Assembly (NCBI GenBank): GCA_048013815.1
Contig: CM106585.1
Location: forward strand, 17,422,001-17,486,000
DNA length: 64,000 nucleotides
Direction: 5' to 3'
Origin: Setoptus koraiensis
Lineage: Eukaryota > Animalia > Arthropoda
Shown here: positions 16,381-45,293 of the stretch, in pieces
How positions within the stretch are numbered: the first letter of the stretch is position 1
Layout: each line of letters begins with the position of its first letter
Translations under genes and position numbers: made by a program
The notes under the pieces: model-generated
Databases searched by the model: none
Seen by the model: only the letters and a program-made list of their open reading frames with translations
What the model was told of the DNA's origin: nothing

Positions 16381-17620
16381 CGTTGTTGCTGCTGCTGCTG
16401 CTGTTGTTGCTGCTGTTGTTGCTGTTGTTGCCGCTGTTGTTGTGATCCATGATTAATGGCTCTCGTTTTGGCGAGTATCAAACTACAAATCACCTGTTGT
16501 GTGTACTCATATAATCTCGTTGTTGTGTTATTATTGCCAGTTTGATCTATTTGCGAGCTTGCCATCTATTTAACTCGCTCGCTTGTGGCAACCGGCAACA
16601 AATAGCTTGCTGCTTGCTGGACAGGTAAGCTAGTTGCTTGTTGCTGTTGTTTATCCCTATGCGACTCGCACAGACATAAACTGTGAGTCGTGGCCGCCGT
16701 TGAGGCACTTGTCAGCTGTGAAAAAGACGACGATAAAATAATAATAACGGTCCACTAATAGCACCTGTTGCTCATCATCATCCACTGGATGGGACAACAA
16801 CAGCAACAGCAACAACATCCCATCGTCTGTCAAATTGTGCTCATATTAATAATACTCTCACTCGCTCGCTTTTATCGGCCATCCGTTGCAAGTTTCAATG
16901 GATAGCCGATAATATATAAATTGTATCGCTTGTTATAAATATCATAAATATATAAATATTACATCCAGGCAATGGCCGGGCCAATGTTGACTTTGCTATT
17001 ATTTTGAGCTGTCGGCCATTTCGGAGCGTATGGACGAGTGGCCGATACCGTCGAGCAGTCGATACCGGCGAGCAGCGAGAGCATCGTTTAAGCGGCACAT
17101 CTCGACCCATCAGATTGGATGACTGAACTCGACCGGCCGGTCTAATTTCGGCCAGTCGCCGTTCGAATATATAAATATCCGACATAAGTGATATCGTCCA
17201 CTGGCGGCCATTTACTTGCCTTTATTTCGGCTTTGTTTGCCGAGCTCACTTTGATTTCTTCATGACGCGCTTGATCGCACACACACAGGAAGTGGCAGGT
17301 GAAGTGGCAGCGATCGATTATTACCGATTATATCTGTTGTGATGGCAGATATGATACGAGATATACAATACAAAGTTGAACATACTCTCCCTCATAATAT
17401 TATCTTATCGGCGCCATTATCTTTTTCGCTATTTACTGTGTATCTAACCCATTATTTGTCTTTGTTTCATCACTGTTTGTTCAATTGGCCGCTTGCCAAC
17501 ATGGCGCTCACTTGCCATGTTTAAATTTATTTGCACGTTTCGTTTTATGTGACGTAACACTAACAATTGAACTAACTTGCAAAATTCGTTGTTGTTGCTA
17601 CCAACTTACAAAACTTACAG

Positions 17621-17797
17621 CAAGCAACTAACACGTGACATGACGTTCATCGTACAACTTACAACTTGCACATCAACGCACAAAGTGGCCAGAGGAAATA
17701 GATGGAGCCACTGTTGAGGAAGCAAGCCAAGGCGAAACAGCAAGCGAACAAAGTGATTAATATTAGACAAGATTATTATTAGCAAACCAATTAGCAG
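17621..17797 (+). other. Probable 5' UTR part of the large RhoGEF exon (acceptor TTACAG at 17615-17620)
   Basis: A 243-nt AG-free zone with CTAAC motifs ends at this AG. An in-frame TAG at 17792 precedes ATG 17798. There is a consensus donor CAG|GTAAGC at 16624/16625 upstream. Confidence 0.55.
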
Positions 17798-19777
17798 ATG
17801 ATGGATGCAGATGTGACTGTTTCATTTGTGTCAGCAGCAGGCCAACAGCAAAGCGAGCAACTTGACACAAGCGAGCATCACAAATTGCAAACAAGCGCCA
17901 CAAGCGGACAGGTGAAACAAGAGCAGACAAATCACATCAAGTATGACAATAATCTACTGATAACCACTGTCCATTCACAGCAGCATCATTCGTTGGTTAA
18001 TTGTCATTCGTTTGATTCGTTGCATGATTCATTGCTACACGATGACAACGATGACACATTGCACAACGCGAAACACCAAGCAACAAACAACAATCACTAT
18101 GACGACGCCACAAAAACAACAACAACAACAACAACAACGACAACAATTGATTATGATTTCACCGACACTAACAACGGCAGCGTGCAGTTTGCGACAAGTC
18201 ACCACAACAGCAGCCCAAACAAACACCAACACAATAGACAACAACATAGTCACATTGGCCCTCTGGAGGTGCTCACCGACACCAGAGATATAATAGTAGA
18301 AGCGGAAGTTGTGTCGGCGAGACCAACAATAGAACAACAAGCGAATAACAATGAGCGCCAACAAACACGAGCCAACAGAGTGGCTGCCGGTTGTGTCGCA
18401 TCACAGCAACAACATCAGCAACAACAACACCAACAACAACAGCAACAGCAACAACAGAGTGGCAATTTAGTCACAGCAACACAGACATTTAATCACACAA
18501 GTCACAAGTCAAAGATGGCGCCCACCTTAAATAATTCCTCCTGTCCGGTAGTGGTAGCGACAATTGGCACCAATACCCTGGCCCAGCACAAATACCAGCC
18601 GGCCAGGGTATTGCCCAAATTGCCCGCTCGAAACATTGTTACAAATAGGGGCTCTTGTTCTCTGTGCAAGGCTCAATCGTGTCTGTCAACTAATTGTCAA
18701 TCAGCACCAATAAGAACAACAACAGCAACAACAACAACAACAACAACAACAATAAACAATAAAATTGTAACTGGATCCTCTACCTCTAACTCGCCACTGT
18801 GTTCGCCGCCGTTGAGTTGTTGCACAAGCGACGAGTCGCCCTCATCAGTGTCGCCCTCATCGTCGTCGACAACGTCGTGCAGCGCCCACTCGAATTCATT
18901 AGTGCCATCATCGTTTGCGTCATCGTCAGCGTCGTCATCATCGTCGTCACCTCCCGCTTGCGTCAGCGATCTTATTCTAATTAATAATGGTCACTCGTCA
19001 TCGTCGCACGACCACGACGACGACAATGACGACAGTGCCAGCTCAATGACATCGCCAGCGCCACCAATAAGCGATGACGCAACATCACTCAATGGTCATC
19101 TTGACAGTCATCATCATCATCATGACGACAGTCAGCTCAACAGGCAGCTTGACGTGGTCGCGGCAACAGCGAACGGTCAGCAAGGTGAGCAGCAAACAAA
19201 AGATTGCTCGCCACAAACACTGACCAGTACAAATGAGATTGAGTCAGCGGATGAGAATTGCGCCCAGCTGAATCAGATGGATTTGATCAGTTTCAACGAC
19301 AACATCGACAACGATAGCGCACTGATTGAGCTCGACAATTGGCACCAGCAACAATTCGACGACGACGAATTGACCTCTTTGCCCTTCGGAACGTTCGACA
19401 GGCACCAATTGAGACGGTCACTCTCGACACCCTCAATTGGCTCGTCGTTTGATAGGTGCCCAAACAATAGTGATCAGCTGTTGTTCAATGAACAAACAAG
19501 CAACAAACAATTAGTGGACACAACACAAATTGTCGTCAATAATCAATCGGCGTGCCAATCGACAATTGTCAGCAAGCAGCAGCAGCAATTGTCAAACAAT
19601 GAACAACAACCACTCACTGACCATGATCACCAGTTGCAATATAAACAGCATGATGCACAATTGGCTTGGCCGGTAGCAGCAGCGCCATCAACCGGTGGTC
19701 AGCAGCAACTACAACAGGCCACAACAAATAGCAGCAGCAGCACCAAGAGAAACTGCACTGCCAACAACAATAAAACC

Positions 19778-19817
<40 letters not shown>

Positions 19818-19956
19818 CTTCCGCTGTAGCAAACCGCTTTTCAGCGTCCAACGCAACAGTGTCGTCGCAAAACTCAGTCGATCAGCTGAGGCCAATGGTC
19901 AAGTCTAGCTGGTGGTCATTGTCGTCGCACTGTGTAGCCGCTCAAGTTCCAACCAG
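17798..19956 (+). CDS. RhoGEF coding exon 1 (low-complexity Q/T/S/N/H-rich N-terminus)
   Basis: 720-codon ORF ending at donor CAG|GTGAGT in phase 2. Its link to the RhoGEF comes from phase-compatible splicing, not from homology. Confidence 0.7.
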
Positions 19957-20139
19957 GTGAGTATTGGTCACTGCCACTGCCACTGCCACTGCGACAGAGA
20001 TCGAGAGATTGACCGGAAGTTTGTTGCAAATCTCTCATTATAACTCTTTCAACTTTGTTTCTTATTTTCTTTTTGTCTTTTCGACAACTGTTGTCATTGC
20101 TCATTGTGACAACTGTTGTGCGTTGCGTAATGCTTACAG

Positions 20140-20951
20140 TGGCACCAACCAACAACACGAGATCTCGGCTCGCCTGATGCGATTGAGCAACAACAACAAC
20201 AGCAACAGCGTGGCCTCGTTATCGGCCGATCAGGGCGCCAAGCCGGATAACGCCGGCATCAATCAGCTGTGCGGAGCGTCGGGCAAATGCGAGCGCCGCT
20301 CCAAGGGTGCAAAACGTTTTCTGTTGCGCAATTTCATGCTTCGCTCCAGCAAAACAACAGCAACAACGACAACAAACTCAGTTGCTGCTGCAACATGTAA
20401 TTTGTCGCCAACCTCGACAACGCCGCCACATCCGGTCTTGGCGAGCGGCCACAAGTCGTCGGCGGCGGCGAAACACCGGACAGCGGCGGATCAAAACGGC
20501 GCCAGCAGCAGTGACAGTTGCAATGATTTGGTCATGTGTTCGCCGGCGACACCGGCTGATAAAATGGTCATTAATGGTTCGTCAGCATCGTCATCATTAA
20601 ACAATCTCGATTTGTGTGTGTTTGATGTGTCATCCAACCTGCCATTGGCAACAATAGAGCAACAACAGCAACAACAGCAACAACAGCAACAACAGCAACA
20701 ACAGCAACAACAGCAACAGCAAGACGCGAACGCATTGTCATCGTTGTGCAATGTTGCGCCAACAATGGACGAGCCAGCCGAGGGTCATGAGATTATCAGT
20801 TCATCGTTGGGCGAGCAACCACCGAGCCACCAGCCCATGGAGGCCAACGGAAAACAGTTGGATGAGCCGCAACGAGTCAGCAATAGCACGGCCAAAAACA
20901 ATAAGCATCTGAGCAAATTAGCCACAGAGCGACGGAGCTCGACAAAACAAG
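20140..20951 (+). CDS. RhoGEF coding exon 2
   Basis: Acceptor TTACAG| in phase 2 and donor AAG|GTGAGT in phase 1; open reading frame with poly-Q. Confidence 0.7.
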
Positions 20952-22359
20952 GTGAGTGACTGGGCGCAATTACATAACTGTTGTTACGTAAGCGTTGTTG
21001 TGTGCAGCGGGTGCGACACGTTTATTCTGCTGGTCACCATCATCATTAGATGGCAATTCAATTTGGCTTCATTTAGCGCGCTGTGGCGATACACTGTACA
21101 GATACAAATAGACAGACATCTATATCTCTCAAAATCTGCCAGTGTGGTGGCGCTCGCGGAACATTATCATTAGTTCGGATTGGTTCAAATTGGTTCGGAT
21201 TGGCTCCGATTGGCTCCAAGACTTGCAGTCGAATCGGCTCCAAGTCGGCGCTCAATATCTGAACTGAGAGTCGCAGTTTCGAGCTGCGCCAAAGCAGCCG
21301 AAATGAAAGCAAACGAAATTAAGTTATGCAAACAAAAATGCAAACAAACCGGCGACTTCTGATTCAGAAGTTCTGAATCATCTGGGCTCGCAACGACGCG
21401 GGCGATTCGTATCGAGCTAGCGAGCCGTTTTGTGCGAACACACAAATTACAAATTTTTAATCAAACGAGTCGCGATAATAACAACCTGTTCTGTTTCATT
21501 ATCATTAGCTGCAATTAGCGATACAATGCGGCTCGTACGATCGCCAAGACTGGTCAACACACTGAATGATGCTCGCCGACTTTGCCGGCCGAAGAGGCTC
21601 TCTGAGGGCCACTGACCGGCCTGGCGTCACTGTTAGGCGTGATTGTGGCAACAATAATGTGGCTGTTGCTTGCAGCGATCAGTTGAAAGAGTTTGCTGTC
21701 TAGAGATCAAATGTTTGCCAAATGGTAGAGTTATTTGGGCGCAATTAGCTCTCTTGTTCAGTGCTCATTGGTCATTGCGGCGCTCGTCTCGTCCATTGTC
21801 CACTGGCCCTAAACAACCAACCAAACAACCGACTCAACAACCGACCGAACAACCGACCGAACAACCGACTCAACAACTGACAACAGCAACCAGCTGATGC
21901 TGCTCACCTGGCGGCTGTTGTGCGCGTATGCCTGACAAACAACAGATGCCTCGACAATGGACGCCAATGGCATTAATCGACAACATTGTTCTTGCTGTTG
22001 CAGCAACATAAACAATCGACCATCCTCGTTGTGTGACATATCGCCGGTCAGTCACCTGTTGCGCAATGTGCTTGCGATGGCCACTTTGAAATGTGTCCAC
22101 TCAGCTTGCTCAAACTAGCTCTTGCTGACCAACAGTCAAGATTGATCGCACGCTGACATTGAGTGTGTGTAAGTGTGTGTGCCGACCAACTTGCGAGTTT
22201 CGCAATTGCCAGTTCGAACTGCGACAATTGCGAGTCGGAGAATTCGAGGTTTGACAATTCCGAACTCGAATTCGAGAATTCGCAATTCCTAGTTCGAACT
22301 CGAGAATTCGCAATTCCTAGTTCGAGTCCGAGTCCGAGAATTTGCAGTGCCGAATTTGA

Positions 22360-22374
22360 GTTCGAGAATTTTCA
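22360..22374. promoter_or_regulatory. Perfect three-unit heat-shock element (gTTCgaGAAttTTCa)
   Basis: Matches the nTTCnnGAAnnTTCn consensus, inside a TCGA/GAATTC-rich island. Confidence 0.35.
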
Positions 22375-25300
22375 GTTCCGAGTTCGAGCATTCGCGGTGC
22401 CCAATTCAAGGCCGCCGGCTCGACAGACACGAAGCACAATCACCGCAGAGTCACTAGAGAAGAATGTCAACAGGCTGCTCGCTACCGGACAGTGGCTAGC
22501 GTGCCATTAAACTGCGCTCACGTTGGCTCAATTCGACTCAATTCAATAAATGAGCCACTCTGTGCATTTGCTCTGGCTGTCGCTCATCATTCAATGGCGC
22601 GATATTATTGCCGATCGATTGTTTGCTGCACAGTGAACAGTCGAATTTTGATTGAACTCTTTCTGGCACGCACACCAACCGGAAGCATTTATATCAAACA
22701 TCATATATCATTTATTGTTTGTCGTATATTATACATGACGCGCGATATTTATTTCGGTGCGATGCGCTTTTTTTAAACCATTGGCCATTCGCCAAAAGCG
22801 TGATTCGCGGCCAACAGTTATTATCATTGAAATTTATTGCATGTGAAATAATTATGGGATTGGGCGCAAGAGGCCGTTTCGCGGCCTATTTCGTGCTTTA
22901 TTTCAAGCACTTAATACACTCACACCATGTGAGTAACAAGTCGGTTGTCTGGCGAATTACAACTCAAAAATAAGTTATTACCAAATTACTTTTGCGGCTG
23001 TTTCCGGCAACATACCGGCGCACGACCGGTGGCGACCAATAGTGGTCGTGGAGCAAAGCAAATTATCGCAAGCGATTATTTAAGTAGTCGGGCCGGCAAT
23101 TGCAGGGCCAGTGTGATATATGCAAGTGGCTGCTTATTTCGTGCACACTCTTTTGTTCCGAATACAAACACAAGCCGCGGTATCGGCCAATCGATTGTTT
23201 TCCTCTCCACTTATTAGCTGTGCTGTGCGCATTGTGTGACACACTCTCGATGTTACGCAATGGCCACTAGTGACGCGGCCATTACGTAACATTGACAGAG
23301 AGCGGCCAATTGTATTATTTTTATCATCGATTGGCTCGCATCAGCGCCGGCAATGTTGCAACGACAGCAACAACGACAGCAACAACGACAACGACAACGA
23401 CAACAACACTCGACATGTTGCGTAACAGGGCATGCTGATGCGGCCGTGCGAGGAGCCAGCGGGTGACAATGAGTTGCCAGCTCGCAAAATAATAGTCATC
23501 TCGACAGCCGACTAGCAGTTGTGAATAGAGACAGACAATGACAAAAGAACACGAGACAGCACACAAGCCAACAAAAAGGCGATAAAGTTATTGTCTTTGG
23601 CCCACAGCTATTACGTAATGTATTATGTGTAATATTATATGTGATGCGCCAGTATTATTACTAGTAAATGTTGTAAGTGTTTATTTTTCTTGTGATCGCA
23701 CACAACAGCTGACAACAGGTTGCAGCATCCTTTTTTCTGCGGCGCATTATTATTATTTTTATCGATGCGATTGCCACTGGCAGCCACTTGCAGTCACTGC
23801 AATGCAGTGTGAGGCATGCAAAAACAAAAGTCGTCGTCTTGTTGTTTGTCGCTCGTTGTTACCTGTTGCCTGTTACCTGTTGCCTGTTGCTGTCAAGGGC
23901 GAGACATCGCCATCGGCAGCAGCCTCATACAAGCCTCATACTGATGGACAAGGCCACTCACCTGTCGCTGTGATGCAATCGATCGTGCTGCTGCTGCCGC
24001 CGTGTCTAGCTTGTCTAGATCTAGGCGGACACACACACACACACACATAATAATAGTGACAACGATGGTCCAGTTCGCAAAGATGATCCGCTCCAGCGAC
24101 ATATCGCACACACAATTGTTGTCGCCAGTGTGACAATCATTTGAATCATGACGCATTCATATGTCCGGCTCATTGTGTCCGCTCGCAGCAATTCAATCAC
24201 AAGTAATCACAAGTTGCAATGTCCAGCCGACGACACAACAACCGATGATGCAACCGATGGCATTATGTCCGCATCATAACCGATAATGGGGACACGCAAA
24301 TCATGGTCGGCCGTTTGATCTTGAAAAAGTGCTCAAATCGCTGCCGGGCACAACAATGTTCGAGGAGAAAAGAACAACGACAATTCACATGCCAACTCAT
24401 AATTCTCAGCTTGGGCCCTGAAAAATGGTTGCGCCGAGCGCGAAAAAAGCGTCGCATTTGTGGCTCATTTTTTCCCCTCCGCTCGGCACAAACCGACAAA
24501 GATGACACCCGACATTTTTTAGCTATCGCTCGTATTGGCGCGCTATTTTCGCAGAAATTTTTGCGCAATTTTGCGCAAACTTGCAGCACTTTACACAAAA
24601 GTGTCACATCGGTTTGTGGCAAGCGATGGCCATAATCTCCAGTCCACACAATAATCAGTTGACGGCGACACACTGACAGCTGAATGCAACCAATGCACCA
24701 TTGTCCGGCTCAAACAATGCTGAAGAGCTCAGCGCATTTTCAAGATTTTTCAAGACTTTTCAGCGAACAATTTCCAAAATCAAGCAGCGTTACCTGGTGC
24801 GTCCCTTGCCGGCTGATTGTTGCATATATGGCACTCTAATCAGCTAATGGGCCAATAACCTGAAGCGCACTCTGTCGGCCAGACGATGATGGCTGTCATA
24901 CATACAGTTAGGCGGCTATAACTGTACGTAAGCAGCTTGCATATAAAGTTGTTACGTAACTGTTGCCGGCGGCGACTTGGTGCCACTCGCAACCCGTTGT
25001 TACAGGCGCACCCGTTAGCGTTGCCACAAAGGCCAGACTGACCTCAACAGCGAGAATGTTGTCGTTGTTGTTGCGCAACTGCTGTCCGTCTATCCGTTTG
25101 AAATGATTGCTTCCTGCTTGCCGTTGTCCCTGATAGAGTGTTTCCTCACAATGCCTCATGACGCCTCACAATGCATCATATGGCATCGCATGGCATCGCA
25201 TGGCATCGCATGGCATCGTAATGGTCAGCTGTTCAGCCGAGTGTCCGGTTGCGATGAACTTGACTGCTGGCAAAGTGTGAATATTTATTACTATTATTAT

Positions 25301-25462
25301 TGTTATTGCGTAACTTTTATTGTGTGTAAGCGGGCGCCATATCGACGCATCGGCAGACAGTCGGACACAACAAGTGGCCAGACGTGAGGCGCCAGTGTTA
25401 AGGACACAACACCGAGGATGCAAATCGATTTGTTTGCTCACATACATCGCCCATCGATGCAC

Positions 25463-25732: not shown

Positions 25733-25767
<35 letters not shown>

Positions 25768-30656: not shown

Positions 30657-31414
30657 CTGAATTATCTCACTGGCGAGCACATCGCCAGACTACAAAACTC
30701 ACAATCTAATGCACACAAAATGCACTACAACTCGGCCATCATAACACTGTTATCACAACACCAGATCCATTAGACACACGCTACCTGTATTACACCTAAT
30801 ATATTACACTGTGCCGGTATTAGACTCACCTGTGCTCACCTGTGCTCATTACCTGTGCTGTCGAGTGGTGTTGTCGAGACTCGAGAGAAGCCCTTGCACG
30901 AGTGAGCACAAGTGCTGTCGCATGACCACTCACTCTCTCTCTCTCTCTCATGCTTTTAATACATATCTATTATATGTATTGTATGTGTCACTTGTGTGTA
31001 TCATGGCAAGCTCTTACACTTACTTGTTACTGTGATACAGTTACTTGTTACTGTGATACAGTTACTGTTTGCACACAATTATAACGAGACACGAATAATG
31101 ATTTAAATGAGGCACTCATATGCAAATTAGCTCATTGTGCTCGCAGGGTGTCGCTGGGCCAAGACGCTGGGTGTTTTATTGGCGCTTGCTCAACGATCGC
31201 CGGCCTCAACGGTCACAACAAGACTCATATTGTTGCCATTGTAGCATCAAGCAATTGTGCAAGCATCGACCTGTTGCACACGCAAGCTCCAAGCCAAAAT
31301 TTAGCTCAAACACTAAACACAAACAATCATCTGATAATCATAATTTTACCGTTTTGTCTATTTTAATTTATATCAATTCAATCACGTTACGTTCAATCTC
31401 GCAACAACGCGCAC

Positions 31415-31516
31415 AATAACGCATAACAACGCATAATAACGCATAACAACGCATAACAACGCATAACAACGCATAACAACGCATAACAACGCATTATAAC
31501 GCATATTAACGCATAA
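31415..31516. repeat. 10-bp tandem repeat (AACGCATAAC), about 10 copies
   Basis: Directly visible immediately upstream of the 31527 acceptor. Confidence 0.95.
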
Positions 31517-31526
31517 TCAACAACAG

Positions 31527-31691
31527 CAGCGGCATCATCGTCGTCAGCCAGCAGCGCAAGTGGCCAAAAGAAATCGTCCTACCTTCACCTGTTTGAATTG
31601 GCTTTCAGTTCGCGAAATCAACGGAGAAGTCGCATTAAGGCAGCAGCAACAACAACAACAACGGACACCGTCCAACAATCGTCGTGTTCAG
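31527..31691 (+). CDS. RhoGEF coding exon 3 (AAASSSSASSASGQKKSSYLHLFELAFSSRNQRRSRIK...)
   Basis: 165 nt, symmetric phase 1-1, strong donor CAG|GTAAGC, preceded by about 220 AG-free nt. The given ORF track shows only a different frame here. Confidence 0.6.
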
Positions 31692-33053: not shown

Positions 33054-33872
33054 AACAGATAAAATCTCGCTGGCCGCTTGTTTGCAGCGCCCATTAATTT
33101 GGTGTTGCCATTATTCTGGCCAGATCAATTGAGAGATTTACTCTCTCGCTCTCAATTGATGGCAACGTGAACTGGCAACGTGAACAACAAATCAGCTGCG
33201 AGCACCCTCGCCAGTGTCATGACTTGGCGGCCGGTGCGCAGAGTTTTAATGACAACTCGTTGATTAGCGCAATTTGTTGCGTTCACATTAGCATTCAATG
33301 AGAGATGGCGCTCGAGATTTCGCTCTCATTTGCAGCAGCAACAACAACGGAAACAACAACACCCGCAACAACAACAACAGAGATAACGGCCAATGATTAG
33401 AGCGACACGATTCAGCCTTGTTCGGCGCAACTAGTGGCCACCGGAAACAATGGCCAATTGTGTGCTGGTGCAAGCGCCATCGATTGCTTATTAATATTGT
33501 TGCGCGCGCAAAGATGGCGAGATAAACAAATATTGCGCCACCATAATCGTCCAGTTACAATCGTTTGATTATCACTCGATTACATAACTGTGGCCGCGCG
33601 AATCGAGACAATTTTCGCAAAAGCTTCCCATAAAGTTGTGCGCATGAATGATAGCCAGGCAAACATATCTGGTCTGGCAAACATATAATGTTATGTGTCC
33701 ATGTGTTTCCATTGTTAGCCCTTTGTTTCTGTTGCCTGCACCCATCTCATGGCATCTCATGGTGCCTCGATCCTATTTGGCATTGCCCAATCACTCGATG
33801 CTATTATCTAACGTCTATACACTCTTTTCTTCTGTATGTGATATTCATCTTGGTGCCATATGGACGGAATAG

Positions 33873-34155
33873 CAGTCGACGATAAGACACCGACCAACAA
33901 CAGCAACAACAACAACAACAACAACCAATGGTTAGATAAAAGTCAAACTAACGACAACAATCAGCTGTCGCCAACAAATGCACACCCACTAGCGCCATCA
34001 TCGGCAACAACTGCCACTGCGACAACACCGGCCACTGCCAGCAGCGCCACAACAGCCACAGGAAGTGACCAGGCCGGCCAACAGCAGCAGCAACAACAAT
34101 TCAAAAAATTGTTGCCGCTCAACAAACAAACGGAATCGCCAGAAATCAAATCAAG
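33873..34155 (+). CDS. RhoGEF coding exon 4
   Basis: Tandem acceptor TAG|CAG| (33873 or 33876, both phase 1) and donor AAG|GTGAGC in phase 2. CTAAC plus a pyrimidine tract lie about 60 nt upstream. An in-frame ATG at 33860 is an alternative start. Confidence 0.65.
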
Positions 34156-34887: not shown

Positions 34888-34942
<55 letters not shown>

Positions 34943-37900
34943 AAATGGGCGAATGTGACGCTAATCAGGCGCTGCCAGTGACTGGCATAATGGTGCCGAT
35001 TATTAAAAGATTCGGCTACGATTGCGCTATCTTGTCAGTGATTGTATTGTTTTTGAAACTTGTGTAATTAGAGGGCACAATCAGTCGAGACGTCGACAGG
35101 TATCGTTTTTGTGGTTAAATAACCGGTGACAGCTGTGTGCCGGCGACACATTCGAGATAATCAGTCAATAAATCAGTTTGTTGTGATCAATTGACATTGT
35201 GAGAGCAAGCCCCAACTGCCAACAGCCACAGTGAGAGCGGATTATTTTTAGTCGCGATTCGCGAAGCGATCGACCAATCGATTAGATCGAACGCATGTCA
35301 ATGCCGACGAAGCGACTCGCGTAAATTCTCGATTGATCCGATCGACATAGCGAGATGCCAATTTGCTCGTTTCTTGATGCAACAAGCAAACAACAAACGA
35401 AGACGACAGAAACTCTAACAAATAAACGCTCTAACAATAATCGCTGCTGATATCAATATGCAAGCGCAACATTTACATTTGAATGTTTTCTTTTGCTGTT
35501 GCTGTTGCTGTTGCTGTTGTCGTCGTTGCTGTTGTTGTCGTTGCCGTTGTTGTCGTTGCTGTTGTTGCGCGACCCTGAAAACGGTTTCCATGGTTACCTG
35601 CATGCCAGAGAGAGAGAGAGAGAGAATGGATGTGTAGAGATAAGAAGGCAACATCAACCAGTTTGCAATGCCATTCAGCGTGGCAACAACCAACAAAGGC
35701 ACACAGAGTTAATTATGATGATCAAATCATAACGGGTTCACTAACTGGTCTATTTACTACTGCTGGCCAACCATTCATAATTCATTTATTTATTTTTACA
35801 CACACGCACACGCAGAGAATAACGGGCCAAACATCGCAATAAATCTGTGCCTGTGTCTTGGCAACAGGTGAATCGGCAGCTAGCCAACGTGCGCTTGCTT
35901 GTCGAATGCTTGCAGCAATTGATACATGATACAGACGTAACAATTGTTGCATGTTATAACAAATCAATTACATCTATTTGGGCCTCTCTCTTATATTTGG
36001 TATTCACCATTCAATATGCCGATCGATTATCAATGTTACCTGCTGGCTGTAGCATTTGCCATGCACAGACAATATTTAAATAACAAACAGTTTTCGGGTA
36101 ACGTTCGCATAGTATTGAGATAATGTGCACACTGGGCATATGTAAATGCTATTGGCGTGCGGTTGTAATTTAATTACGACCATAGAGCAGTCACACTAAA
36201 AAGAGTCTTACTTTGCAGTGTTAGGCTAAACACACACGAGCACAGACAAACAAAGCGACAAGAAACAAGGTAGCGAAAAGAGATAAATAAATATTAAGTT
36301 ATCGCACGCTCATTATGAGCGCACACGATAATTATAATTATGCAATTGAACAATAACAAACAAACCGATTTGCACAAACTGTGCCGCTGGCTGTGCCACT
36401 TGCACAAGTAACGGTTCGTTGTCTATTTAATTTGAATAATACTCATATAATTGATTGTTGTTGTTGTTCGCATCAACAATTATCATGACAGCAAACATAA
36501 CTGGCCAACAGTTACAATGATAGTGGCTCTTGATTGATACTTGTTGTCGCTCTTGTTTGCTCACCTGTTGCTCACCTGTTGCTCACAATAAACCGGCCGA
36601 GGCAACAATATAAACAATGCACAGTGTGCCAAAGATTGTCTTGTTCATTGGTAACGTCATTATGATTATTTTGGCGCCGTCATTTGACCCATAAGTTATG
36701 GCCAACAATGGCCACCATACGCACAATGGCATTCGCACAGGTGAGCTATTTCCACGACAGGTGACTCACAATACAGTCAGATACAGTGTTGGTGTTGTTG
36801 TTGGTGTTGGTGCCAATGCCAGTGTTAGTGCCAGTGCCAGTGTTAGCGCCAGTTACTGCACTGGGCAGTCAGAGCAGAGCGCCAATTGACAAGATTCTTG
36901 TCAAGATTTTGTCAAGTGTGAGTGGCAACTCTCAGTTTCGCCAGCGCTCTCTGTTGGCTCTTGTGTGTGTGTTCTCTGTTGTGTTGTCGTTGTTCGCTCT
37001 CTTCGTTCTTTTTGTTTGTCTTGGCAGCTCGAGGCTCGAAGCTCGAAGCTCGAGCGACGCTCAGCTGGCCAGCGACCGACACATCGGCAGTCGGTGCGTT
37101 TCCCACGTAGCCGTTGCTGGCCACGCCGTCACGCAACAGCCGCCCTTGATTGTGATAGTCGGTGCCCCGTCGGCTCGCCACTCGACTGGCGAGCCGTTCG
37201 CCGAGACGCCGGCAGCTTAGCAAGCGCTTCGAACGCTTCGAACGCTTCAAAGCGCTCGCAGCGCTCCAACGCAGCCCAAGTGAAGTGTTCGGTCTAAGCG
37301 AGCTTGCAATTTTTCCACAATTCGCGCTCCCAATTGCAGCTCAAATGGAGCTTCCAGCCAGCGAGCTTAATTGTGTGTGTCCATGGCGGCCAGTGTGAGC
37401 CAGCCTTGCCATGGCCACTTGATCTTGATAATGAATTCTTTATTTTCTGCTGTCTCCTGTGCTGTCGTTTTGTTTCGTTGGTAGCGTGCCCATTCTTTGT
37501 GTGCCACGGCTGGCCGGCCCATTACGCCAGCCAGCCGGCCCATTACGCCACCCGGCCGGCCCGTAATGCCGGCCGGCCGCAACACTCAAGACTGGAGGAT
37601 AACATTATAATGGCGCAAGACACACGCAGCCAGCGACGCAAAGCGCGCCCGAGCCAAGCTGTTGAAAATGCTTACTTAATTATGGACATACCCAGGCGCT
37701 ACCAAGTTAATCGAATGCGCTACCTGTCCGCAATTGGACATTGGCAACTGGCCAGCGGTTGCATGGCCTGTCAATTGGCCAGTAGCAAGTAGCCGGCGAG
37801 CCGGGGATTACGGGCAGGCACCGATGATTATGATGGCCAGACAATGATGAGATATTAATGATGATAATGGACATGAGGGATTAAGTTGTTGTTGTGGTCG

Positions 37901-39465
37901 TCGTTGCTATGTTTAGCCGTCTGGCCGTCGGTCGCCCGTTTGGAGGTCAAGTATCAATATTATGACGGATGATGAATAATAACAATAACGGTTGCGCCGG
38001 CCGACGCGCCGCCCGACACGCTGGCCGGCGCGTCTCATCATTAACCTGTCGGGACAGCGCCATCGTTTGGCGAGTTGCGGCCCGGCCCGAGCGGCCGCAA
38101 CTCGAGCCGGCCGGTCGCCGGGCATGAGTTTGTTGCTGGCAGCAGCAGCAGCAGCAGTAACAAACTGATTGGCAATTGCGGCGCTCGATTGCCAAGGCCA
38201 GTGATAAATTGGCAATATCTAAACAACGGCCGCGGAGATTATCGAAAAGTGAGCGACTGACCGGACATAACTCGTCTGGCGTTATGATTGATTCACATCA
38301 CTTAAATAGATGGATATATTTATGAGTATTGCCGCTGATGATGAATTCATCAACAGCAACAACAATTACAACGAATCACGATCGCTCGACTGTCTATTTT
38401 TGAAGCCAATGTCGGTCCAATGTCGGTCCAGTGTCGGCCGGCCAGCATTGCATGGCCGACATTGGATGGCCAGCGTTGGATGGCCAGCGTCGGATGGACG
38501 GTGCCGGTGAAACGCGCCAAAGCAAACAGACCTAGAATTCTTTTGCCGTCCGCAATTCTTTTTGCCCACTGACCACTGACCACCGACCGCCGACCACTAT
38601 CCACTGGAACACATTGGGCCCGAAAGAATCGCACTGACCACTGCGCAACTCTCTCGCTCTAACGCCTGATGGCCGTACGAGCCAATCGCGAGCGTCTGGC
38701 CGGCGCTCGTCAGGCCGATTGGCCGGGTGAACCATATTTGCGAACACAATAGTGAAATAGTGCGAAACATTGCGAAATGTTTTCTGTTCGCCGTACACTT
38801 TACACAATCATTAGGCTCGCTCACGACGACCCAAACACTGCCCCCGCCACCACCGTTATCCGTCTGTTACGTAATGATGGCCACAGCTCGAGACGCAACA
38901 CTTGCTCCCTTCGAATCCATTATTTCAGAGCGAATTACTTCGGAGGGAATCATTTCTTAGGGAGTTATTTCGGGAGGGCACTATTACGGGAGAAATTAGA
39001 GATCTCAGCACTGGATGAGAGTGCCCAATCGGGCCGGCCACCTCTTCGGGCATGAACGGAACACAACAGTGTGTCGGGTAATAATTTGAACAAAATTCAT
39101 GCCAGGCCAACAGCGCCTGATTAGATGATGAACTGGGCCGTCGAGCGACTATGCCCAGACGATTACAATTGTGGCCATTTATGGTGCAATCATTAGCGAT
39201 GAGCCAGCATTTCGGTCGGTGGCTCTCGATTGCCAGTGGGACACAACAAACCGACCAAACCAAAGTCAGCTCGTCCGGTCCGGTGTGACCTTCAAAGAGC
39301 TCGCTCGTTTGCTGCTCGTCGCCGAGACACAAATTGGCAAGACGCAATTGGCCAGACACAAATAATATGTAATATATTTGGCACAATGACACGCTCGTTT
39401 GGCGGCCACGTAGCCGCGGCCCGAGTCCGTTTGACAGTATGGAACGAGTCACTTTTGGCCCGAAA

Positions 39466-39564
39466 TTTCGAGCCAAATTCGAGCCAAATTCGACCAATTT
39501 CGAGCCGAGTTTCGAGCCGAGTTTCGAGCCGAGTTTCGAGCCGAGTTTCGAGCCGAGTTTCGAG
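39466..39564. repeat. 12-bp tandem repeat (TTTCGAGCCGAG), 5 perfect copies plus degenerate copies
   Basis: Perfect units from 39498, preceded by shorter variants. Confidence 0.95.
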
Positions 39565-40877
39565 GTCTATTCCGAGCCAAAAGTGAGAAGCGGAAAAGTG
39601 AGCGGGCAACGCTGGTCAGCGGTGTCGCATTTCAGATGGTCCAAATTTAGATAATGCTGATCGCTAATTGTTGCTGATTAATTATCAATTCCAATCGTTT
39701 GTCTGTTTGTTCGTCTGTTTGTTTTTCTGTTGGTCTGGTCCGCGAAAATGAGCGCCGATTTCACTGATTATTATGCAAATTTCGTCGGTCAACTTGTTAC
39801 TTTTGGCCCGTCTATATATCTGGTAACTGTGAGCATATTTGCGTCGCGCGTAAACACACAAACAGCCTCGGGCCGACGACGCCTCGAGCTAGCAACTGGC
39901 GCCAGCTTGGTCAGCCGATTTATTTTATTAATTTAGTCGCTGATACTGGGCAACCTGTGATAATTAGCATAACAGTGGCCATGGACAGTGTTGGTGTTGA
40001 TTAATTAATCGCCTTGTCCCGTTGACGATGCCATAACTCTTGCCTTGGTGATGTGTTCATATGAATTGCACACAATTGCATGTTAGATGCAATCGCTTGG
40101 CATGCTAATTTATGGCATTGTCATTATGGTCATGGCAGCATTGTTGTTGGCTTGTGACTCACAAGTTGTGAGCGATATTGTCGTTGTTGTTGTTGTTGTT
40201 CAAGTCAATTGAGCCGACAAATAACTAGCCGCAACGGCTAATTAACCAACTAATCAATTAACTAATTAATCCAGTCCAATGTCCACACATAAGCAACAAC
40301 ATGTGTCGCGCAAATATGATTGTTGTTCATCTCGCTTCACTTCACCTCACCTCACCTCACTTCACCTGGCTTCACTTCGGCTGGCTTCACGCCTCGGCGA
40401 ATCTGTCTGGCCGCTAGCCATTGGCCAATGACGACCATGGCTGATCATGATAGTGCTGATACATAACAAGACAATATGCTCTCGTTTTATCACACACACA
40501 CACACACTAACAAGCCAATTGAGTCACTTGTGAGTCACAAATTGTCAAGACAACTCACATTTGTGACTCACAAATGGCTGCTGGTATCACCGGCTTCGTT
40601 GTCAAGGTGAAGCCAACAAACTGGCCAGCATCCTATTTGCGAATAGTAGTTATTATATCTCATCATATATTGATCATTCGTGAGACAATAAAGGGTTTCC
40701 TTGTTGGCGCATCCAAACCGGCGAGAGTGGCGCCATCCAGCGACAATTCGGCAACAATGCAGCCAGTGAGTCAGTCTGACACAAGTTGTGCGATTGCGGC
40801 AGCCGCCAAACGAATGTATTGCCGACACAAGAATCTTGTGACAAGTGATACAAGTGACAGAGCTATGACAGTTGCCA

Positions 40878-40976
40878 ACAGTCGACATTCCGACAGTTGA
40901 CATTCCGACAGCTGACTCAACGACAGCCGACTCAACGACAGCTGACTCGATGACAGCCGACTCGATGACAGCTGAC
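40878..40976. repeat. 15-bp tandem repeat with stepwise drift, about 7 copies
   Basis: ACAGTCGACATTCCG changes progressively to ACAGCTGACTCGATG. Confidence 0.85.
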
Positions 40977-41520
40977 AAAATGATGGACGCAGGATGACAC
41001 GGTGTGGTTGGCATCATCATAATGTTTGTGTGCGCTAATTGTCATTACGTTTGTCGTCGTCGTCGTCACCATCAGCTGGCGACTAGCAACAGGTAGTGTG
41101 AGTGGCGGCATTAGGGACAAGTTCAAGTTCATTAGTTACACACTTACAAACAAGTTGTCGTGGCCAGATTGGCTGCAACAGATAGCATGCGCCGAAGTAT
41201 CGATTTGCGATTGTCAGATGCCCATGTCGACAGAGAGATGCGTTGACATAGATTCAAATACTAGTAGCATGACAGTGCTGAGGTAAACGCCGGCAAACAC
41301 ACACACACAGACGAACGTCTAATTAGTCTCATTGTCGGTGCGAAAAATCTCAAGTCTCGTATGTCGACTAATCAACTCGAGTCTCATGCCAACTAATCAA
41401 CTCAAGTCTCATATCAACTAATGCTCAATATTTCTGTTTATTTACAATTGATACAAACAACAACAACACACTCGATGACATGAACACTGACAACAATACC
41501 AATTTATTTGATGTGACCAG

Positions 41521-42436
41521 TGATTCGTCGAGCCCCAATCTCCAGCAGCAGACCCTTTGTCAACAGTCAAGTGAGCGGCAAGAGTTTGTTGAATTGTCAA
41601 ACAGTTCAGACACGCCACAACAACAGGTGAATCAAGCGCAAACACAAACAAATCAAACACAAACAAACCAAACACAAACAAACCAAGACAGAAGAAGCGA
41701 ACAAGAGGAATCGCTCGAAATGGAGGCCGACCAATGGGTGTCCACCATTAAAAACAAACAATTACTATCCGAGATGGAGGACAGTGACATTCAACGTCAA
41801 GAGATTATCTATGAGTTGATACAAACAGAGAAGCATCATTGTTCCACATTGGAGATTATGAAAAAGATTTACAGCGATGGCATCAGGCATCACATGAAAC
41901 TAACACCGTCACCCGCAGCAGCAATACATCAGACAACAACAACAACAGCAACAGCAACAGCCGCCCCAACCACTGCAACAGCAGTGCCCCTAGTGATCAA
42001 CAACCAAACTACCTCAACAACAACAAGTGATACAACAACAACAACAACAACTGACACCACAAGTATCGATGTGTCAAGATTGTTTCCCTGTCTAGACGAT
42101 CTCATTTCCGTGCACGAGACATTTTTGCAGCAATTGCGCGACCGTTACCGTTCGGCAAGATCGCAGCCGGCAGCCGCATCAAAGCAGCACTGTGCATCCG
42201 CAGATTGCCAGCGATTGCATCATGCTAATCATGGCAACACTTATGGCGTAATAAGGCATATTGGTGACATTTTGTTGCGACAATTCAGCTTGCAATTGCA
42301 GCCAGCCGACAACGACAATCAACAACAGCGACATGACGCATCGATTGGCAAGATCGAGCAAAGGTTCGCGTGCAATGCCAACCAGCAACAACATTGCACT
42401 TGTCATACCAATACAAGGGACCAACAACAACAACAA

Positions 42437-42468
<32 letters not shown>

Positions 42469-42589
42469 GTTGGCGCCGGGTACAAAGCTCAGGCTGCTTT
42501 ACGGTCAATTTTGTGGCCAACATTATGACGCAATACAATATTACAAGCGTCTAATGAAGAGCGACAAGCGATTTCAGCGTTTCATTGAG
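41521..42589 (+). CDS. ARHGEF18: RhoGEF exon 5: N-terminal part of the DH domain
   Basis: QRQEIIYELIQTEKHHCSTLEIMKKIY, LFPCLDDLISVHETFLQQL, IGDILLRQFS and YGQFCGQHYDAIQYYKRLMKSDKRFQRFIE match Lbc-family (ARHGEF2/18/28, AKAP13) DH motifs. Acceptor CCAG| in phase 2 and donor GAG|GTGAGT in phase 0. Confidence 0.9.
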
Positions 42590-42814
42590 GTGAGTTGTCT
42601 TGGAATAATTATAATAATACGAGCATTAGTATAATAAATTGTTGTTGTTGTTGTTGCTGCTGCTGTTGCGTAAACTGCAATTGGCCAGCCGGCAACAGCC
42701 ATGAAACGAGCATGAGACGAACATGAAACCGACTAGTTGCCCGCCATAACTGTCTCTAGACTGTTGACCACTCTAGATGGCGACCGACAAAACGCTGACC
42801 ACTGCCTAATCACT

Positions 42815-42858
42815 CACTAATCATCGTTAAAATCTTTTTTATTTTTGTTTATTTTGTC
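42815..42858 (+). promoter_or_regulatory. Candidate distant branch point (CACTAAT) plus U-rich tract for the 43232 acceptor
   Basis: CTAAT is followed by a T-rich tract, with no AG between 42777 and 43229. Confidence 0.55.
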
Positions 42859-43231
42859 TAATGCCTACTTACTCACTTAATGGCCACACAACAAAAACAA
42901 CATGCTGCAAACTACAAACTGCACACTAACCAACAACAAACAACCAACAACCAACAACCCGCTTACGTAACATGCGCTGGCGTGCGCTAATTAAATGATG
43001 ACCGACGCTCCTATGGCCCAATGCACGACTCATGTACGAATAATGTGCGGATAATACTATACCAATAATATACCAATAATATCGCCGACTTAAACCGACT
43101 CAACTCCAACTGCTGGCCACTGCTCAAAACTGAATATTCAAATCGCTCATCATGTTTTACTGGACTCATGTTGCGCAATGCCGGCAATGCACTAATCAAT
43201 GCACCATTTCGACGCAATCAATCGCGCGCAG

Positions 43232-43352
43232 AACTGCAACCAACACTATCCCATTTGCAAGACCAAAGGAATACCCGAGTGCATTCTGTTGGTCACCCAA
43301 CGCCTAACAAAATATCCGCTTCTCATCGAGCAGTTGGTCAAGGTCACCAAAG
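43232..43352 (+). CDS. ARHGEF18: RhoGEF exon 6: DH domain CR3 region
   Basis: KGIPECILLVTQRLTKYPLL is the hallmark Lbc-family DH motif. GCAG| in phase 0 to AAG|GTGAGC in phase 1. Confidence 0.92.
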
Positions 43353-44489
43353 GTGAGCATTCAATCGGCAACCCTTTTGTCCGCTCCATCGTCTCAGTAG
43401 TCGCTCATTCAATAGTTTCCGGTTGAGATGGGGAGATTTTTGGAGAATCTGCGTGCTTCTTTCAATTCAATATTTTATAGTGTCGGCCCATAGTCTGGTC
43501 TCGTCTTGGCGCCTGAGCCGGACGAGCGATTGCCCGGAGCTGCTATTTGTTTAGCGGCGGTTTGTTGCTGCTATCGCGCCGGTTGGGCTATTAGCGGCTT
43601 GATTGATGGCCGGGCAAGCCGCATCGTCGTGATCATTAGTGCAATTGGACAGCGACCAACACACAAAAAAGTTTTCTTCGCAAAATATTGTTTGTTGTGA
43701 ACAGTGTGCGCCGTTGTGATAATGACGCCTCTCCTCTATAAATCGCAACATCGCAATATCGCATTAGATGGATGCAGCAACATGTGTTATTATGCAACTT
43801 GCACCTTGCTGTTGGTCATCGTCATCACGCCACTCATCTGACCGTCGCAGGGCAATATCAATTGGCCATAACGGTTCATTAGATCTGTCGGGCGTGCACA
43901 TTGTGTCTGCTTTATACAAATGCTGCTTCATACAGCAATAGTAATGTGCCAGCAATAGTAAGTTACAATGGCATGACAGACGCTGCATTGGCTGCATCCG
44001 TCAAAACAAGCTCACCTGTGCTGTTGGCCCGGCTCGGTCAGCTGACCCATCAGCTGACACCGACCATCATCTGACAGATGGTTCAACAAAGGTGAAGGTC
44101 AACACACACTTACAGCTGATGTGTTCGCATATTCATTTGAGAGCTTCCCTCAATCTAATGAGCTTATTTAGTATCGCTAATGAGTGTTGCGTGATGCAAT
44201 TTGCAGTTGTAGCAGCGTTAGTGCTTGCACTAGTAATAGTAGAGGTAAATTGACTAGTGGCGGCAGCACTAGTGCCAGTGTGTTACGTCCGTCACCTGCG
44301 GCGCCCAATTGCTTCTATTTGATGCTGCGCTCGCCATATTCCTCACCTGTGCTATGCGCTGTCGTGTTGCGCAAGAATGTGTTGCTGTTGTTGCTGTTAG
44401 GTAATTTTGTGCGAGCGAGTAACTTTATTATTATTTCACTATTACTTCCTTGATGCAACGACAACAGCAACAACGACAGCAACAACAGC

Positions 44490-44523
<34 letters not shown>

Positions 44524-45093
44524 ACAGCAACAACAACGACAACAACAACAACAGTGCAACCACGACACGACGTCGATGGCATGCAAGGTGATTATGGCAT
44601 AAGTTACGTAATTTGTTGGTTGGTCAGAAGTGCAGCCAACCGCTGACCGCTCTTGCATCATCTGGCACAACTGGCTGTATCAGCTGTTGTTGAGCAACAA
44701 TGACCTTCGGCTGGCACTGTCAGACAGTGTGCGTGTGTGTCCACCCTTAGGGCACCCATTGGGCAGTCATCTGTCATCAGCTTGTTTTGGGGCTTATCTA
44801 TCGGGCATTATTTCTCACATCTGTCCTCATGAATGCCAGCGCTGTTTTGCTGTCATGTCATGTCTCGTCATGTCATGTCTCATCTCATCTCGACATGCCG
44901 ACTTGTGCTGTCATGTTGCGTCATGTCATTTTTGCTGTCTTGTCATGTTTGTGTGTGTGTGTTGTCTTTGTGTCCATTTGCGTGCTCGCATCATTAGCCG
45001 CCAGTGTCGCCCGCTCTTAACTGTAGCGGCTCGTCTCTCTTTCGTTCACCCCAACAACCTGTTATTAATGCTGTTCATCAATTTTATCAATGT

Positions 45094-45144
45094 TACTAAT
45101 GCCCCATTGTCCCTCTCTGCCCCCGCTTCCTCTTGTGTCTGCCC
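45094..45144 (+). promoter_or_regulatory. Candidate distant branch point (TACTAAT) plus pyrimidine tract for the 45294 acceptor
   Basis: TACTAAT is followed by a C/T-rich tract about 195 nt upstream of the AG; AG-free from 45027 to 45291. Confidence 0.6.
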
Positions 45145-45293
45145 GATATTCAATGTGCAATGTCCCAAAACGACACGCTCAAAATACCCCAACACCAACT
45201 ACCGGTGCTCAAACTGGCTTCGAAACTGGCATTGAAACTGGCATTGGAACTGGCATTGAAACTCGGGCAAACCAATCATCGCCACAACATCAG

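What the first reader, a model, noticed from the sequence alone, without database searches (positions are those of the whole stretch)
17376..45293. Every acceptor of the giant RhoGEF has an ultra-long AG-exclusion zone: a distant-branch-point, scanning splice system
Seen: AG-free lengths immediately before the seven acceptors are 243 (17621), 118 (20140), about 220 (31527), 152 (33873), 112 (41521), 453 (43232) and 265 nt (45294). The five introns of the compact genes have only 26-52 nt. The nucleotides next to the AG are mostly C/A-rich and lack a pyrimidine tract (for example GCAATCAATCGCGCGCAG and CGCCACAACATCAG). In several introns CTAAY motifs followed by the real U/C tract lie 60-410 nt upstream. 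Established: distant branch points with long AGEZ and 5'-to-3' scanning to the first AG are known as rare exceptions in vertebrate genes. Inference: here it looks like the rule for a whole gene, so sequence inserted between branch point and AG is tolerated as long as it contains no AG. Caveat: AG-free runs of about 100-155 nt occur elsewhere in this domain, so only the four of 220 nt or more are individually striking.
Basis: partly seen in the sequence, partly recalled or inferred. Interest (0 to 1): 0.82.

Follow-up and report, generated by a model that had tools for sequence, protein, structure and literature searches.

The report
Long AG-free zones before mite exons
In a gall-mite (eriophyoid) genome, the introns of one large RhoGEF gene each end with 112-453 bases that contain no AG, which suggests the splicing machinery marks the intron far upstream and then uses the first AG it meets; no RNA data were available to prove this.

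Summary
The four AG-free runs of 220 nt or more are the four longest on the + strand of the window. Six of the seven acceptors fit a frame-consistent gene model. Two are also fixed by DH-domain homology. The one at 17621 has no support.

The organism is an eriophyoid mite, an intron-poor lineage. The gene is an Lbc/ARHGEF18 ('cysts')-type RhoGEF.

The zones show the published hallmarks of distant-branch-point exons:
- AG density is normal just upstream of each zone (median 182 vs 20.5 nt).
- There is no pyrimidine tract next to the AG.
- The best pyrimidine tract and CTAAY motifs sit in the 5' third of the zone.
- GA occurs 78 times in the zones and AG never.

Orthologous acceptors in other eriophyoid species are also long (up to 270 nt) without sequence conservation. 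A spider homologue is ordinary (35 introns, median 53, maximum 145).

Caveats:
- No RNA run was listed, so no branch point is mapped.
- Branch-like motifs lie near the AG at four acceptors.
- Part of some zones is tandem repeat.
- Unchecked scan notes report the same pattern in other genes, so it is probably a lineage trait, not a gene-specific one.

Verdict: real, and a new variant of a known kind.

The parts
17376..17618 (+). 243-nt AG-free run before a putative 5'-UTR acceptor (AG 17619-20). CTAAC motifs at -44, -56 and -172.
   Evidence: The acceptor has no donor, ORF or homology support.
17798..19956 (+). Exon 1 coding part (ATG 17798). Donor AG|GTGAGT at 19957.
20020..20137 (+). 118-nt AG-exclusion zone of intron 1 (19957-20139, 183 nt). 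U-rich tract 20058-20082 ends 57 nt before the AG.
   Evidence: The in-frame TGA at the donor makes splicing necessary.
20140..20951 (+). Exon 2.
   Evidence: donor CAAG|GTGAGT at 20952; phases consistent.
31305..31524 (+). 220-nt AG-exclusion zone at the end of intron 2 (20952-31526). U-rich tract near 31344-31365. 10-mer repeat CGCATAACAA x11 at 31410-31521. CAGCAG tandem acceptor.
   Evidence: An in-frame stop inside the zone.
31527..31691 (+). Exon 3, 165 nt (a multiple of 3, so it could be a cassette exon).
33719..33870 (+). 152-nt AG-exclusion zone at the end of intron 3 (31692-33872). CTAAC at -60, followed by a pyrimidine tract. TAGCAG tandem acceptor.
33873..34155 (+). Exon 4.
   Evidence: phase fits exons 3 and 5.
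41407..41518 (+). 112-nt AG-exclusion zone at the end of intron 4 (34156-41520). CTAAT at -98, U-rich tract, then a 75-nt A/C-rich spacer. An in-phase alternative AG lies at 41405-6.
   Evidence: The orthologous zones measure 194, 198, 100 and 115 nt.
41521..42589 (+). Exon 5, first part of the DH (RhoGEF) domain. Donor GAG|GTGAGT at 42590.
   Evidence: The donor is conserved in 13 or more eriophyoid ORFs, all ending 'FIE VS'.
42777..43229 (+). 453-nt AG-exclusion zone covering 71% of intron 5 (42590-43231). CTGAC/CTAAT x3 and a U-rich tract at about 42795-42862, further CTAAY at 42926 and 42987, and a proximal CTAAT at 43192 (-35).
43232..43352 (+). Exon 6 (DH motif ...GIPECILLVTQRLTKYPLL...).
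   Evidence: The acceptor is at the homologous position in L002, L010 and L011.
45027..45291 (+). 265-nt AG-exclusion zone at the end of intron 6 (43353-45293). CTAAT at -193, then pyrimidine tract 45110-45134, then a 158-nt spacer that includes a 12-mer x4.4 repeat at 45211-45263. No YTRAY closer than -193.
45294..49696 (+). Exon 7: end of the DH domain, a PH_16 domain with long low-complexity inserts, a C-terminal coiled region and the stop codon.
   Evidence: The junction VTK|DNPEEER aligns with L009 and L010.

Best explanation
These are real AG-exclusion zones, kept free of AG by selection, at the 3' ends of the introns of an Lbc/ARHGEF18 ('cysts')-type RhoGEF in an eriophyoid mite.

The most likely mechanism is this. 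In introns longer than about 180 nt, the element that commits the intron to splicing is a branch-site motif (CTAAY/YTRAY) plus a U/C-rich tract. It sits 60-420 nt upstream of the exon. [quoted passage not shown] The interval between them is a G-poor, A/C-rich spacer prone to tandem repeats. The spacer can grow and shrink between species (32 to 375 nt at one acceptor) as long as no AG appears in it. Short introns of about 90-120 nt in neighbouring compact genes keep the usual arrangement, with branch site, pyrimidine tract and AG close together.

The trait belongs to the eriophyoid lineage, not to this gene alone.

Shown here: the AG-free zones, their statistics, their anatomy, their recurrence in orthologues, and their absence in a spider homologue. 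Inferred: which branch points are used, and the first-AG rule.
For: - Lengths are exact, and the four longest AG gaps on the + strand are the four zones of 220 nt or more.
- Composition-based P values run down to 7e-10. GA occurs 78 times and AG never in 3,084 nt of zones.
- EZ1 median is 182 and EZ2 median 20.5, Wilcoxon P=1.2e-4.
- In-frame stops inside the zone place the acceptor downstream of it at window exons 3, 4, 6 and 7 and at seven orthologous sites.
- Pyrimidine content at -25..-3 is 29-58% at long-zone acceptors and 71-83% at short-zone ones.
- The best pyrimidine tract lies at a median 0.30 of the zone, P=0.015.
- Orthologous zones: exon 5 has 194, 198, 100 and 115 nt; exon 6 has 270, 113 and 47; exon 7 has 182 and 49. 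All three exon-6 orthologues and the F. setiger exon-7 orthologue contain the same elements: a branch motif, a pyrimidine tract and an A/C-rich spacer before the AG.
- In the spider homologue, 35 introns have a median zone of 53 and a maximum of 145, with the tract next to the AG. Mann-Whitney P=1e-5.
- Four sequence variants between samples fall inside the zones and none creates an AG.
- Eriophyoids are intron-poor with long remaining introns (PMC7738191).
Against: - No RNA-seq run was listed, so no junction or lariat is observed.
- YTRAY motifs lie 16-57 nt from the AG at 17621, 31527, 41521 and 43232. Relaxed UNAY motifs are common everywhere.
- Two orthologous acceptors are short (49 and 47 nt).
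- The spacers are G-poor (12.8% against 23.7% in intron background) and partly tandem repeat. This inflates AG-free runs: an irrelevant 268-nt run lies antisense to a polyQ stretch.
- The spacers show no stabilising RNA structure that might bridge 150-400 nt (z = 0.49 and -0.61).
- Acceptor 17621 is unsupported and 41521 is ambiguous.
Confidence: 0.6

Rival explanations
1. Conventional proximal branch points are used. The long AG-free runs are a by-product of G-poor, A/C-rich, microsatellite-laden sequence on the transcribed strand, together with the reader's picking of AGs that end long runs.
For: - Proximal CTAAT, CTAAC, CTGAC or TTAAC motifs lie at -16 to -57 at four acceptors.
- The 28-kb gene span gives 119 TRF rows, and 51% of the exon-3 zone is one repeat.
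- 56 runs of 120 nt or more occur in the window.
- GG is absent over similar lengths in the G-poorest zones.
Against: - AG is the longest-absent dinucleotide by a wide margin at the strongest sites: 453 against 58, 265 against 90, 270 against 100, 152 against 21.
- GA occurs 78 times and AG never in the zones.
- AG density is normal immediately upstream.
- Acceptors 43232 and 45294 are fixed by homology, not by the run.
- The zones recur in species whose intron sequence does not align.
- The missing proximal pyrimidine tract and the distal tract are not explained.
Confidence: 0.15
2. The zones are regulatory platforms of a few alternatively spliced exons, as in vertebrate exons repressed by PTB that have distant branch points. 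On this reading the feature is specific to this gene or exon and serves isoform control, not a lineage-wide splicing habit.
For: - In human, long zones are enriched at cassette exons, and the tested cases are PTB-regulated (PMC1431707).
- Exon 3 is 165 nt, a multiple of 3.
- Exons 3 and 4 have NAGNAG acceptors.
- The spacers are enriched in A/C-rich words.
Against: - Exons 5, 6 and 7 encode one DH-PH unit and cannot be skipped singly without breaking the domain or the frame (exon 6 is 121 nt).
- Every intron over 180 nt in the gene shows the feature.
- Unchecked notes report it in many other genes.
Confidence: 0.15
3. Parts of the gene model are wrong. Some 'acceptors' are not used, or further exons with ordinary acceptors lie in the 10.6-kb and 7.4-kb introns. 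'Every acceptor' would then be an artefact of the model.
For: - 17621 has no support.
- 41405-6 is an in-phase alternative to 41519-20, with a CTAAT 34 nt upstream.
- No homology was found for exons 1-4.
- No RNA data are available.
Against: - All six coding junctions keep the frame with GTRAGY donors.
- ORFs inside the long introns have no Pfam match.
- The strongest zones (453 and 265 nt) are at the homology-fixed acceptors.
Confidence: 0.1

Closest known systems
Vertebrate exons with distant branch points and extended AG-exclusion zones (Gooding et al. 2006, PMC1431707; alpha-tropomyosin exon 3, PTB exon 11, GABBR1 exon 23, HTR4 exons 3-5)
   Same: A zone of 100 nt or more without AG directly before the exon. 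Normal AG density upstream of it. A branch motif plus pyrimidine tract toward its 5' end. The presumed rule that the first AG downstream of the branch point is used. Zones of 381-438 nt are known, and several long zones in one gene (HTR4) are known.
   Different: In human only 1.2% of introns have a zone of 100 nt or more, and an estimated 1 in 160-400 has a distant branch point. Here every intron over 180 nt in the gene does, and probably many genes do. The spacer here is A/C-rich and repeat-prone rather than a long pyrimidine tract. The exons involved include indispensable DH-domain exons rather than regulated cassettes. No branch point is mapped here.
Budding-yeast introns: strict branch-site consensus, weak pyrimidine tract, 3' splice site taken as the first usable AG after the branch point (own knowledge; Gahura et al. 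2011, PMC3239191)
   Same: An intron-poor lineage. Strong GTRAGY donors and TACTAAC/CTAAY-like motifs. The AG apparently chosen by position relative to the branch site, not by an adjacent tract.
   Different: Yeast branch-to-AG distances reach about 150 nt, and the long ones rely on RNA structure to shorten the path. Here the distances would be up to about 420 nt, and the spacers show no structure signal. The mite's short introns still have ordinary pyrimidine tracts.
Separation of the pyrimidine tract from the 3' AG by intervening elements (REPA, bioRxiv 10.1101/363804)
   Same: The pyrimidine tract is not adjacent to the AG, and an intervening element sits between them.
   Different: REPA elements are short purine- or G-rich tracts tied to alternative 3' splice sites. 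The mite spacers are G-poor, A/C-rich and 30-375 nt long.

Membership tests
Distant-branch-point / extended-AGEZ exons (criteria of Gooding et al. 2006) | AG-exclusion zone of 100 nt or more immediately upstream of the exon | tested here: met
   112-453 nt at all seven window sites. 100-270 nt at 7 of 9 orthologous sites.
Distant-branch-point / extended-AGEZ exons (criteria of Gooding et al. 2006) | AG frequency returns to normal upstream of the zone (EZ1 much longer than EZ2) | tested here: met
   Median 182 against 20.5 nt, Wilcoxon P=1.2e-4.
Distant-branch-point / extended-AGEZ exons (criteria of Gooding et al. 2006) | [quoted passage not shown] | tested here: met
   The best tract lies at a median 0.30 of the zone, with YTRAY or CTAAY motifs beside it. 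This rests on sequence motifs only.
Distant-branch-point / extended-AGEZ exons (criteria of Gooding et al. 2006) | No good branch site or tract in the conventional position (within 40 nt of the AG) | tested here: inconclusive
   The tract is absent at all long-zone acceptors. YTRAY motifs lie within 16-57 nt at four of seven, and none lies near 45294 or 20140.
Distant-branch-point / extended-AGEZ exons (criteria of Gooding et al. 2006) | Branch point mapped experimentally, and an introduced AG captures splicing | not testable with these tools
   No RNA run was listed. The runs laid on the stretch are DNA contigs.
Lbc-type RhoGEF (ARHGEF18 / AKAP13 / ARHGEF28; Drosophila 'cysts') | DH (RhoGEF) domain followed by a PH_16-type PH domain | tested here: met
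   PF00621 in exon 5 and PF17838 in exon 7. The best named relatives are ARHGEF18 'cysts', ARHGEF28 and AKAP13.

The most novel reading that the evidence does not exclude
Eriophyoid mites as a lineage may have uncoupled recognition of the branch site and pyrimidine tract from the choice of the 3' AG. In introns longer than about 180 nt, a branch-to-AG distance of hundreds of nucleotides (up to about 950 nt by unchecked notes) would then be the norm. This would be a yeast-like first-AG rule in an animal, carried further than in yeast. It might come with loss or divergence of U2AF35 or of second-step factors (Slu7, Prp18, Prp22). It would allow repeat expansion inside introns, constrained only by the absence of AG.
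Probability: 0.4. Interest if true: 0.8.

Novelty: new variant of a known kind. Interest (0 to 1): 0.62.

Why it matters
In animals the 3' splice site is normally defined by a branch point, a pyrimidine tract and an AG packed into about 40 nt. Distant branch points are rare and are usually tied to regulated exons.

A lineage in which long AG-free spacers are routine, even before indispensable domain exons, would be a natural experiment on three questions:
- How far the spliceosome can search for the AG in the second step.
- Which factors set that limit.
- How splice signals change when a genome loses most of its introns.

There is also a practical consequence. Gene finders and splice predictors trained on tract-adjacent acceptors will mis-call exons in these mites, several of which are crop pests.

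Tried and rejected
- RNA evidence. Two run searches listed no RNA run. The three runs that hold the stretch are genomic contigs with no joints.
- A fly origin was rejected. The best named Vps34 match is Aceria tosichella, and the RhoGEF relatives are mite and spider proteins.
- Anchoring on Vps34 to fetch the orthologous RhoGEF failed, because synteny is broken in L007 and L008.
- Protein searches with exon 7 were swamped by low-complexity words, or found nothing.
- RNA structure bridging the spacers: no signal.
- Rfam families in 15-51 kb: none.
- Nested genes or extra exons in the long introns: no Pfam match for ten ORFs.
- A search for spliced transcripts among 13 related proteins: all are genomic ORFs that read into the intron after 'FIE'.
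- An acariform outgroup (Brevipalpus) was not on record, so a spider was used instead.
- The idea that the A/C-rich spacer before exon 5 is coding was rejected. The window-to-L001 alignment needs frame-shifting gaps, and L001 has an in-frame stop inside the zone.


Full report
**Observation.** The + strand of the window has 3,360 AG-to-AG gaps, with mean 17 and median 10. The four zones of 220 nt or more are the four longest.

From base composition alone, the expected AG counts in the four long zones are 21.1, 10.5, 7.7 and 7.6. That gives P of zero of 7e-10, 3e-5, 4e-4 and 5e-4. Runs of 120-190 nt are common on both strands of this repeat-rich region, 56 in all. One irrelevant 268-nt run lies antisense to a polyQ stretch.

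**Gene model.** The + strand ORFs join with GTRAGY donors into a frame-consistent gene:
- CDS start 17798 to 19956
- 20140-20951
- 31527-31691
- 33873-34155
- 41521-42589
- 43232-43352
- 45294-49696

Exon 5 carries the start of a DH domain, and exon 7 carries a PH_16 domain. Exons 5, 6 and 7 together read as one continuous DH domain. The junctions are ...RFIE|NCNQHYPICK...VTK|DNPEEER.

The same two acceptor positions are found in other species. For exon 6 they are L002, L010 and L011. For exon 7 they are L009 and L010. In-frame stop codons inside the AG-free zone show that the acceptor cannot lie upstream of the zone for window exons 3, 4, 6 and 7.

There are two weak points. The acceptor at 17621 lies in a presumed 5' UTR and has no support of any kind. 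For exon 5, the AG at 41405-6 is in the same phase as the one at 41519-20, so it cannot be excluded.

**Organism.** The neighbouring Vps34 gene (51117-54065, a single ORF) is closest to unnamed metagenomic proteins and, among named ones, to Aceria tosichella. The RhoGEF's named relatives are mite, spider and horseshoe-crab ARHGEF18 'cysts', ARHGEF28 and AKAP13 proteins. So the window comes from an eriophyoid mite, not a fly.

Eriophyoids have the smallest arthropod genomes. In Aculops lycopersici 83.7% of genes lack introns, and the remaining introns are long (PMC7738191). The scan's notes place this window on one of two very long sequence pieces. This would fit a two-chromosome assembly like the one in PMC11879100, but that is an inference. 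The two eriophyoid genome papers I read and two library searches turned up no description of branch sites or AG-exclusion zones in these mites.

**Anatomy of the zones.** I applied the internal control of Gooding et al. 2006 (PMC1431707). It compares the zone next to the exon (EZ1) with the next AG gap upstream (EZ2). EZ1 has a median of 182 nt and EZ2 a median of 20.5 nt, over the 14 of 15 window and orthologue sites where an EZ2 could be measured (P=1.2e-4). AG density therefore returns to normal at once.

AG is the dinucleotide absent for longest, by a wide margin, at the strongest sites: 453 against 58, 265 against 90, 270 against 100, and 152 against 21. In the G-poorest zones GG is absent over similar lengths. 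In total GA occurs 78 times and AG never.

The 23 nt before the AG are 29-58% pyrimidine at long-zone acceptors. They are 71-83% at the three short-zone acceptors: the two RasGEF introns and L009. The best pyrimidine tract in each zone lies at a median 0.30 of its length, 140-375 nt from the AG in the long cases, with CTAAY or YTRAY motifs beside it.

The interval from the tract to the AG is A-rich and G-poor (36% A and 12.8% G, against 26% and 23.7% in intron background). It is enriched in CAAC, AACA and TAAC words. It is partly tandem repeat: 51% of the exon-3 zone and about 20% of the exon-6 and exon-7 zones.

**Comparison between species.** For exon 5, the zone is 112 nt in the window, 194 in its closest relative L001, 198 in L002, 100 in L005 and 115 in L006. 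In Fragariocoptes setiger it is about 54 nt at an uncertain acceptor. The window and L001 spacers are homologous but differ by CAA-type repeat insertions.

For exon 6 the zones are 453 (window), 270 (F. setiger L010), 113 (L002) and 47 nt (L011). L010 and L011 show the same order of CTAAC, pyrimidine tract, A/C-rich spacer and AG. The spacer after the tract ranges from 32 to 375 nt.

For exon 7 the zones are 265 (window), 182 (F. setiger, in an intron of only 223 nt) and 49 nt (L009, with the tract next to the AG).

As an outgroup I mapped the 1,508-aa homologue of the spider Caerostris darwini onto its locus. Its 35 introns have a median length of 326 nt. The median zone is 53 nt and the maximum 145, with a U-rich tract next to almost every AG. 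This is despite a lower AG density than in the mite. The Mann-Whitney test against the eriophyoid sites gives P=1e-5.

**Within the window.** Three short introns of compact genes have zones of 43, 26 and 52 nt, with branch-like motifs about 27-48 nt from the AG. The mite's spliceosome therefore handles ordinary introns as well.

**What could not be shown.** No RNA run was listed. The three runs that hold the stretch are genomic contigs. They gave four variants inside the zones, and none creates an AG, but that number is too small to weigh.

Branch points cannot be assigned from sequence. CTAAT lies at -35 of 43232, CTAAC at -44 and -56 of 17621, CTGAC at -29 of 41521 and TTAAC at -16 of 31527. 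Only 45294 and 20140 lack any YTRAY near the AG. The spacers show no RNA structure beyond shuffled controls, and there are no Rfam matches.

**Interpretation.** The pattern meets the sequence hallmarks of distant-branch-point exons. It is lineage-wide at orthologous sites, and it affects indispensable DH-domain exons. I therefore favour a first-AG rule operating from a distal branch-site and pyrimidine-tract module, with an expandable AG-free spacer (confidence 0.6).

The alternatives are less likely but not excluded. They are purely compositional runs with proximal branch points, gene-specific regulatory platforms, and gene-model error.

Sixteen unchecked first-stage notes report zones of 185-957 nt in other genes of this genome. 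I did not test them, but they agree with the cross-species result that the feature is not special to this RhoGEF. The scan has thus found this pattern before on other DNA of the same genome.

**Verdict.** This is a new variant of a known kind. It is interesting mainly as a probable lineage-wide shift in 3' splice-site architecture in an intron-poor animal, and existing Aculops lycopersici RNA-seq data could test it directly.

Noticed in passing
window 51117-54065 and L007: Vps34 is a single intronless ORF. In a close relative (97% identical protein, L007) it is inverted relative to the Cir_N, Rpb5 and Cu2-monooxygenase neighbours. The C-terminal end of the RhoGEF lies on the opposite strand next to it (L007 13492-13854).
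   Followed up: partly
window 17300-45400: The RhoGEF span is very rich in micro- and minisatellites (119 TRF rows in 28 kb). Its coding exons carry long polyQ, polyN and polyT inserts, including inside the DH and PH domains. Exon 5 is only 65% identical to that of a species whose Vps34 is 97% identical.
   Followed up: partly
window 31522-31529 and 33868-33875: Exons 3 and 4 have tandem NAGNAG acceptors (CAGCAG, TAGCAG). The same is seen at exon 5 in L001, L002 and L005. Exon 3 is 165 nt and could be a cassette exon.
   Followed up: no
window 41349-41422: A 25-mer repeat (x2.9) just upstream of the exon-5 zone carries a CTAAT and an AG in every unit. The AG-free zone starts right after the last unit's AG. 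The AG at 41405-6 is in phase and would add 38 residues.
   Followed up: partly
window 20372-20639, - strand: A 268-nt AG-free run lies on the - strand, antisense to the (CAR)n polyQ part of exon 2. It shows that low-complexity sequence alone can produce very long AG-free runs here.
   Followed up: yes
window 59495-59602: The third RasGEF intron has a perfect TACTAAC (59545-59551). An AG lies 2 nt after it, presumably too close to be used, and the next AG is 46 nt further on. The acceptor was not determined.
   Followed up: no
L010 10001-16061 (Fragariocoptes setiger, GCA_019968535.1): The deposited model KAG9511293.1 (589 aa, 'partial') covers only the exon-5 equivalent. Exons 6 (13208-13328) and 7 (from 13552) lie downstream and are not annotated. 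This is the kind of mis-call expected if acceptors lack a pyrimidine tract next to the AG.
   Followed up: partly
window 1-17000: No Pfam match was found for the five ORFs tested in the first 17 kb (GC 43-50%). Several 130-180-nt AG-free runs on the + strand (ending at 5259, 7164, 10958 and 16474) might mark upstream non-coding exons of the RhoGEF. This was not tested.
   Followed up: no
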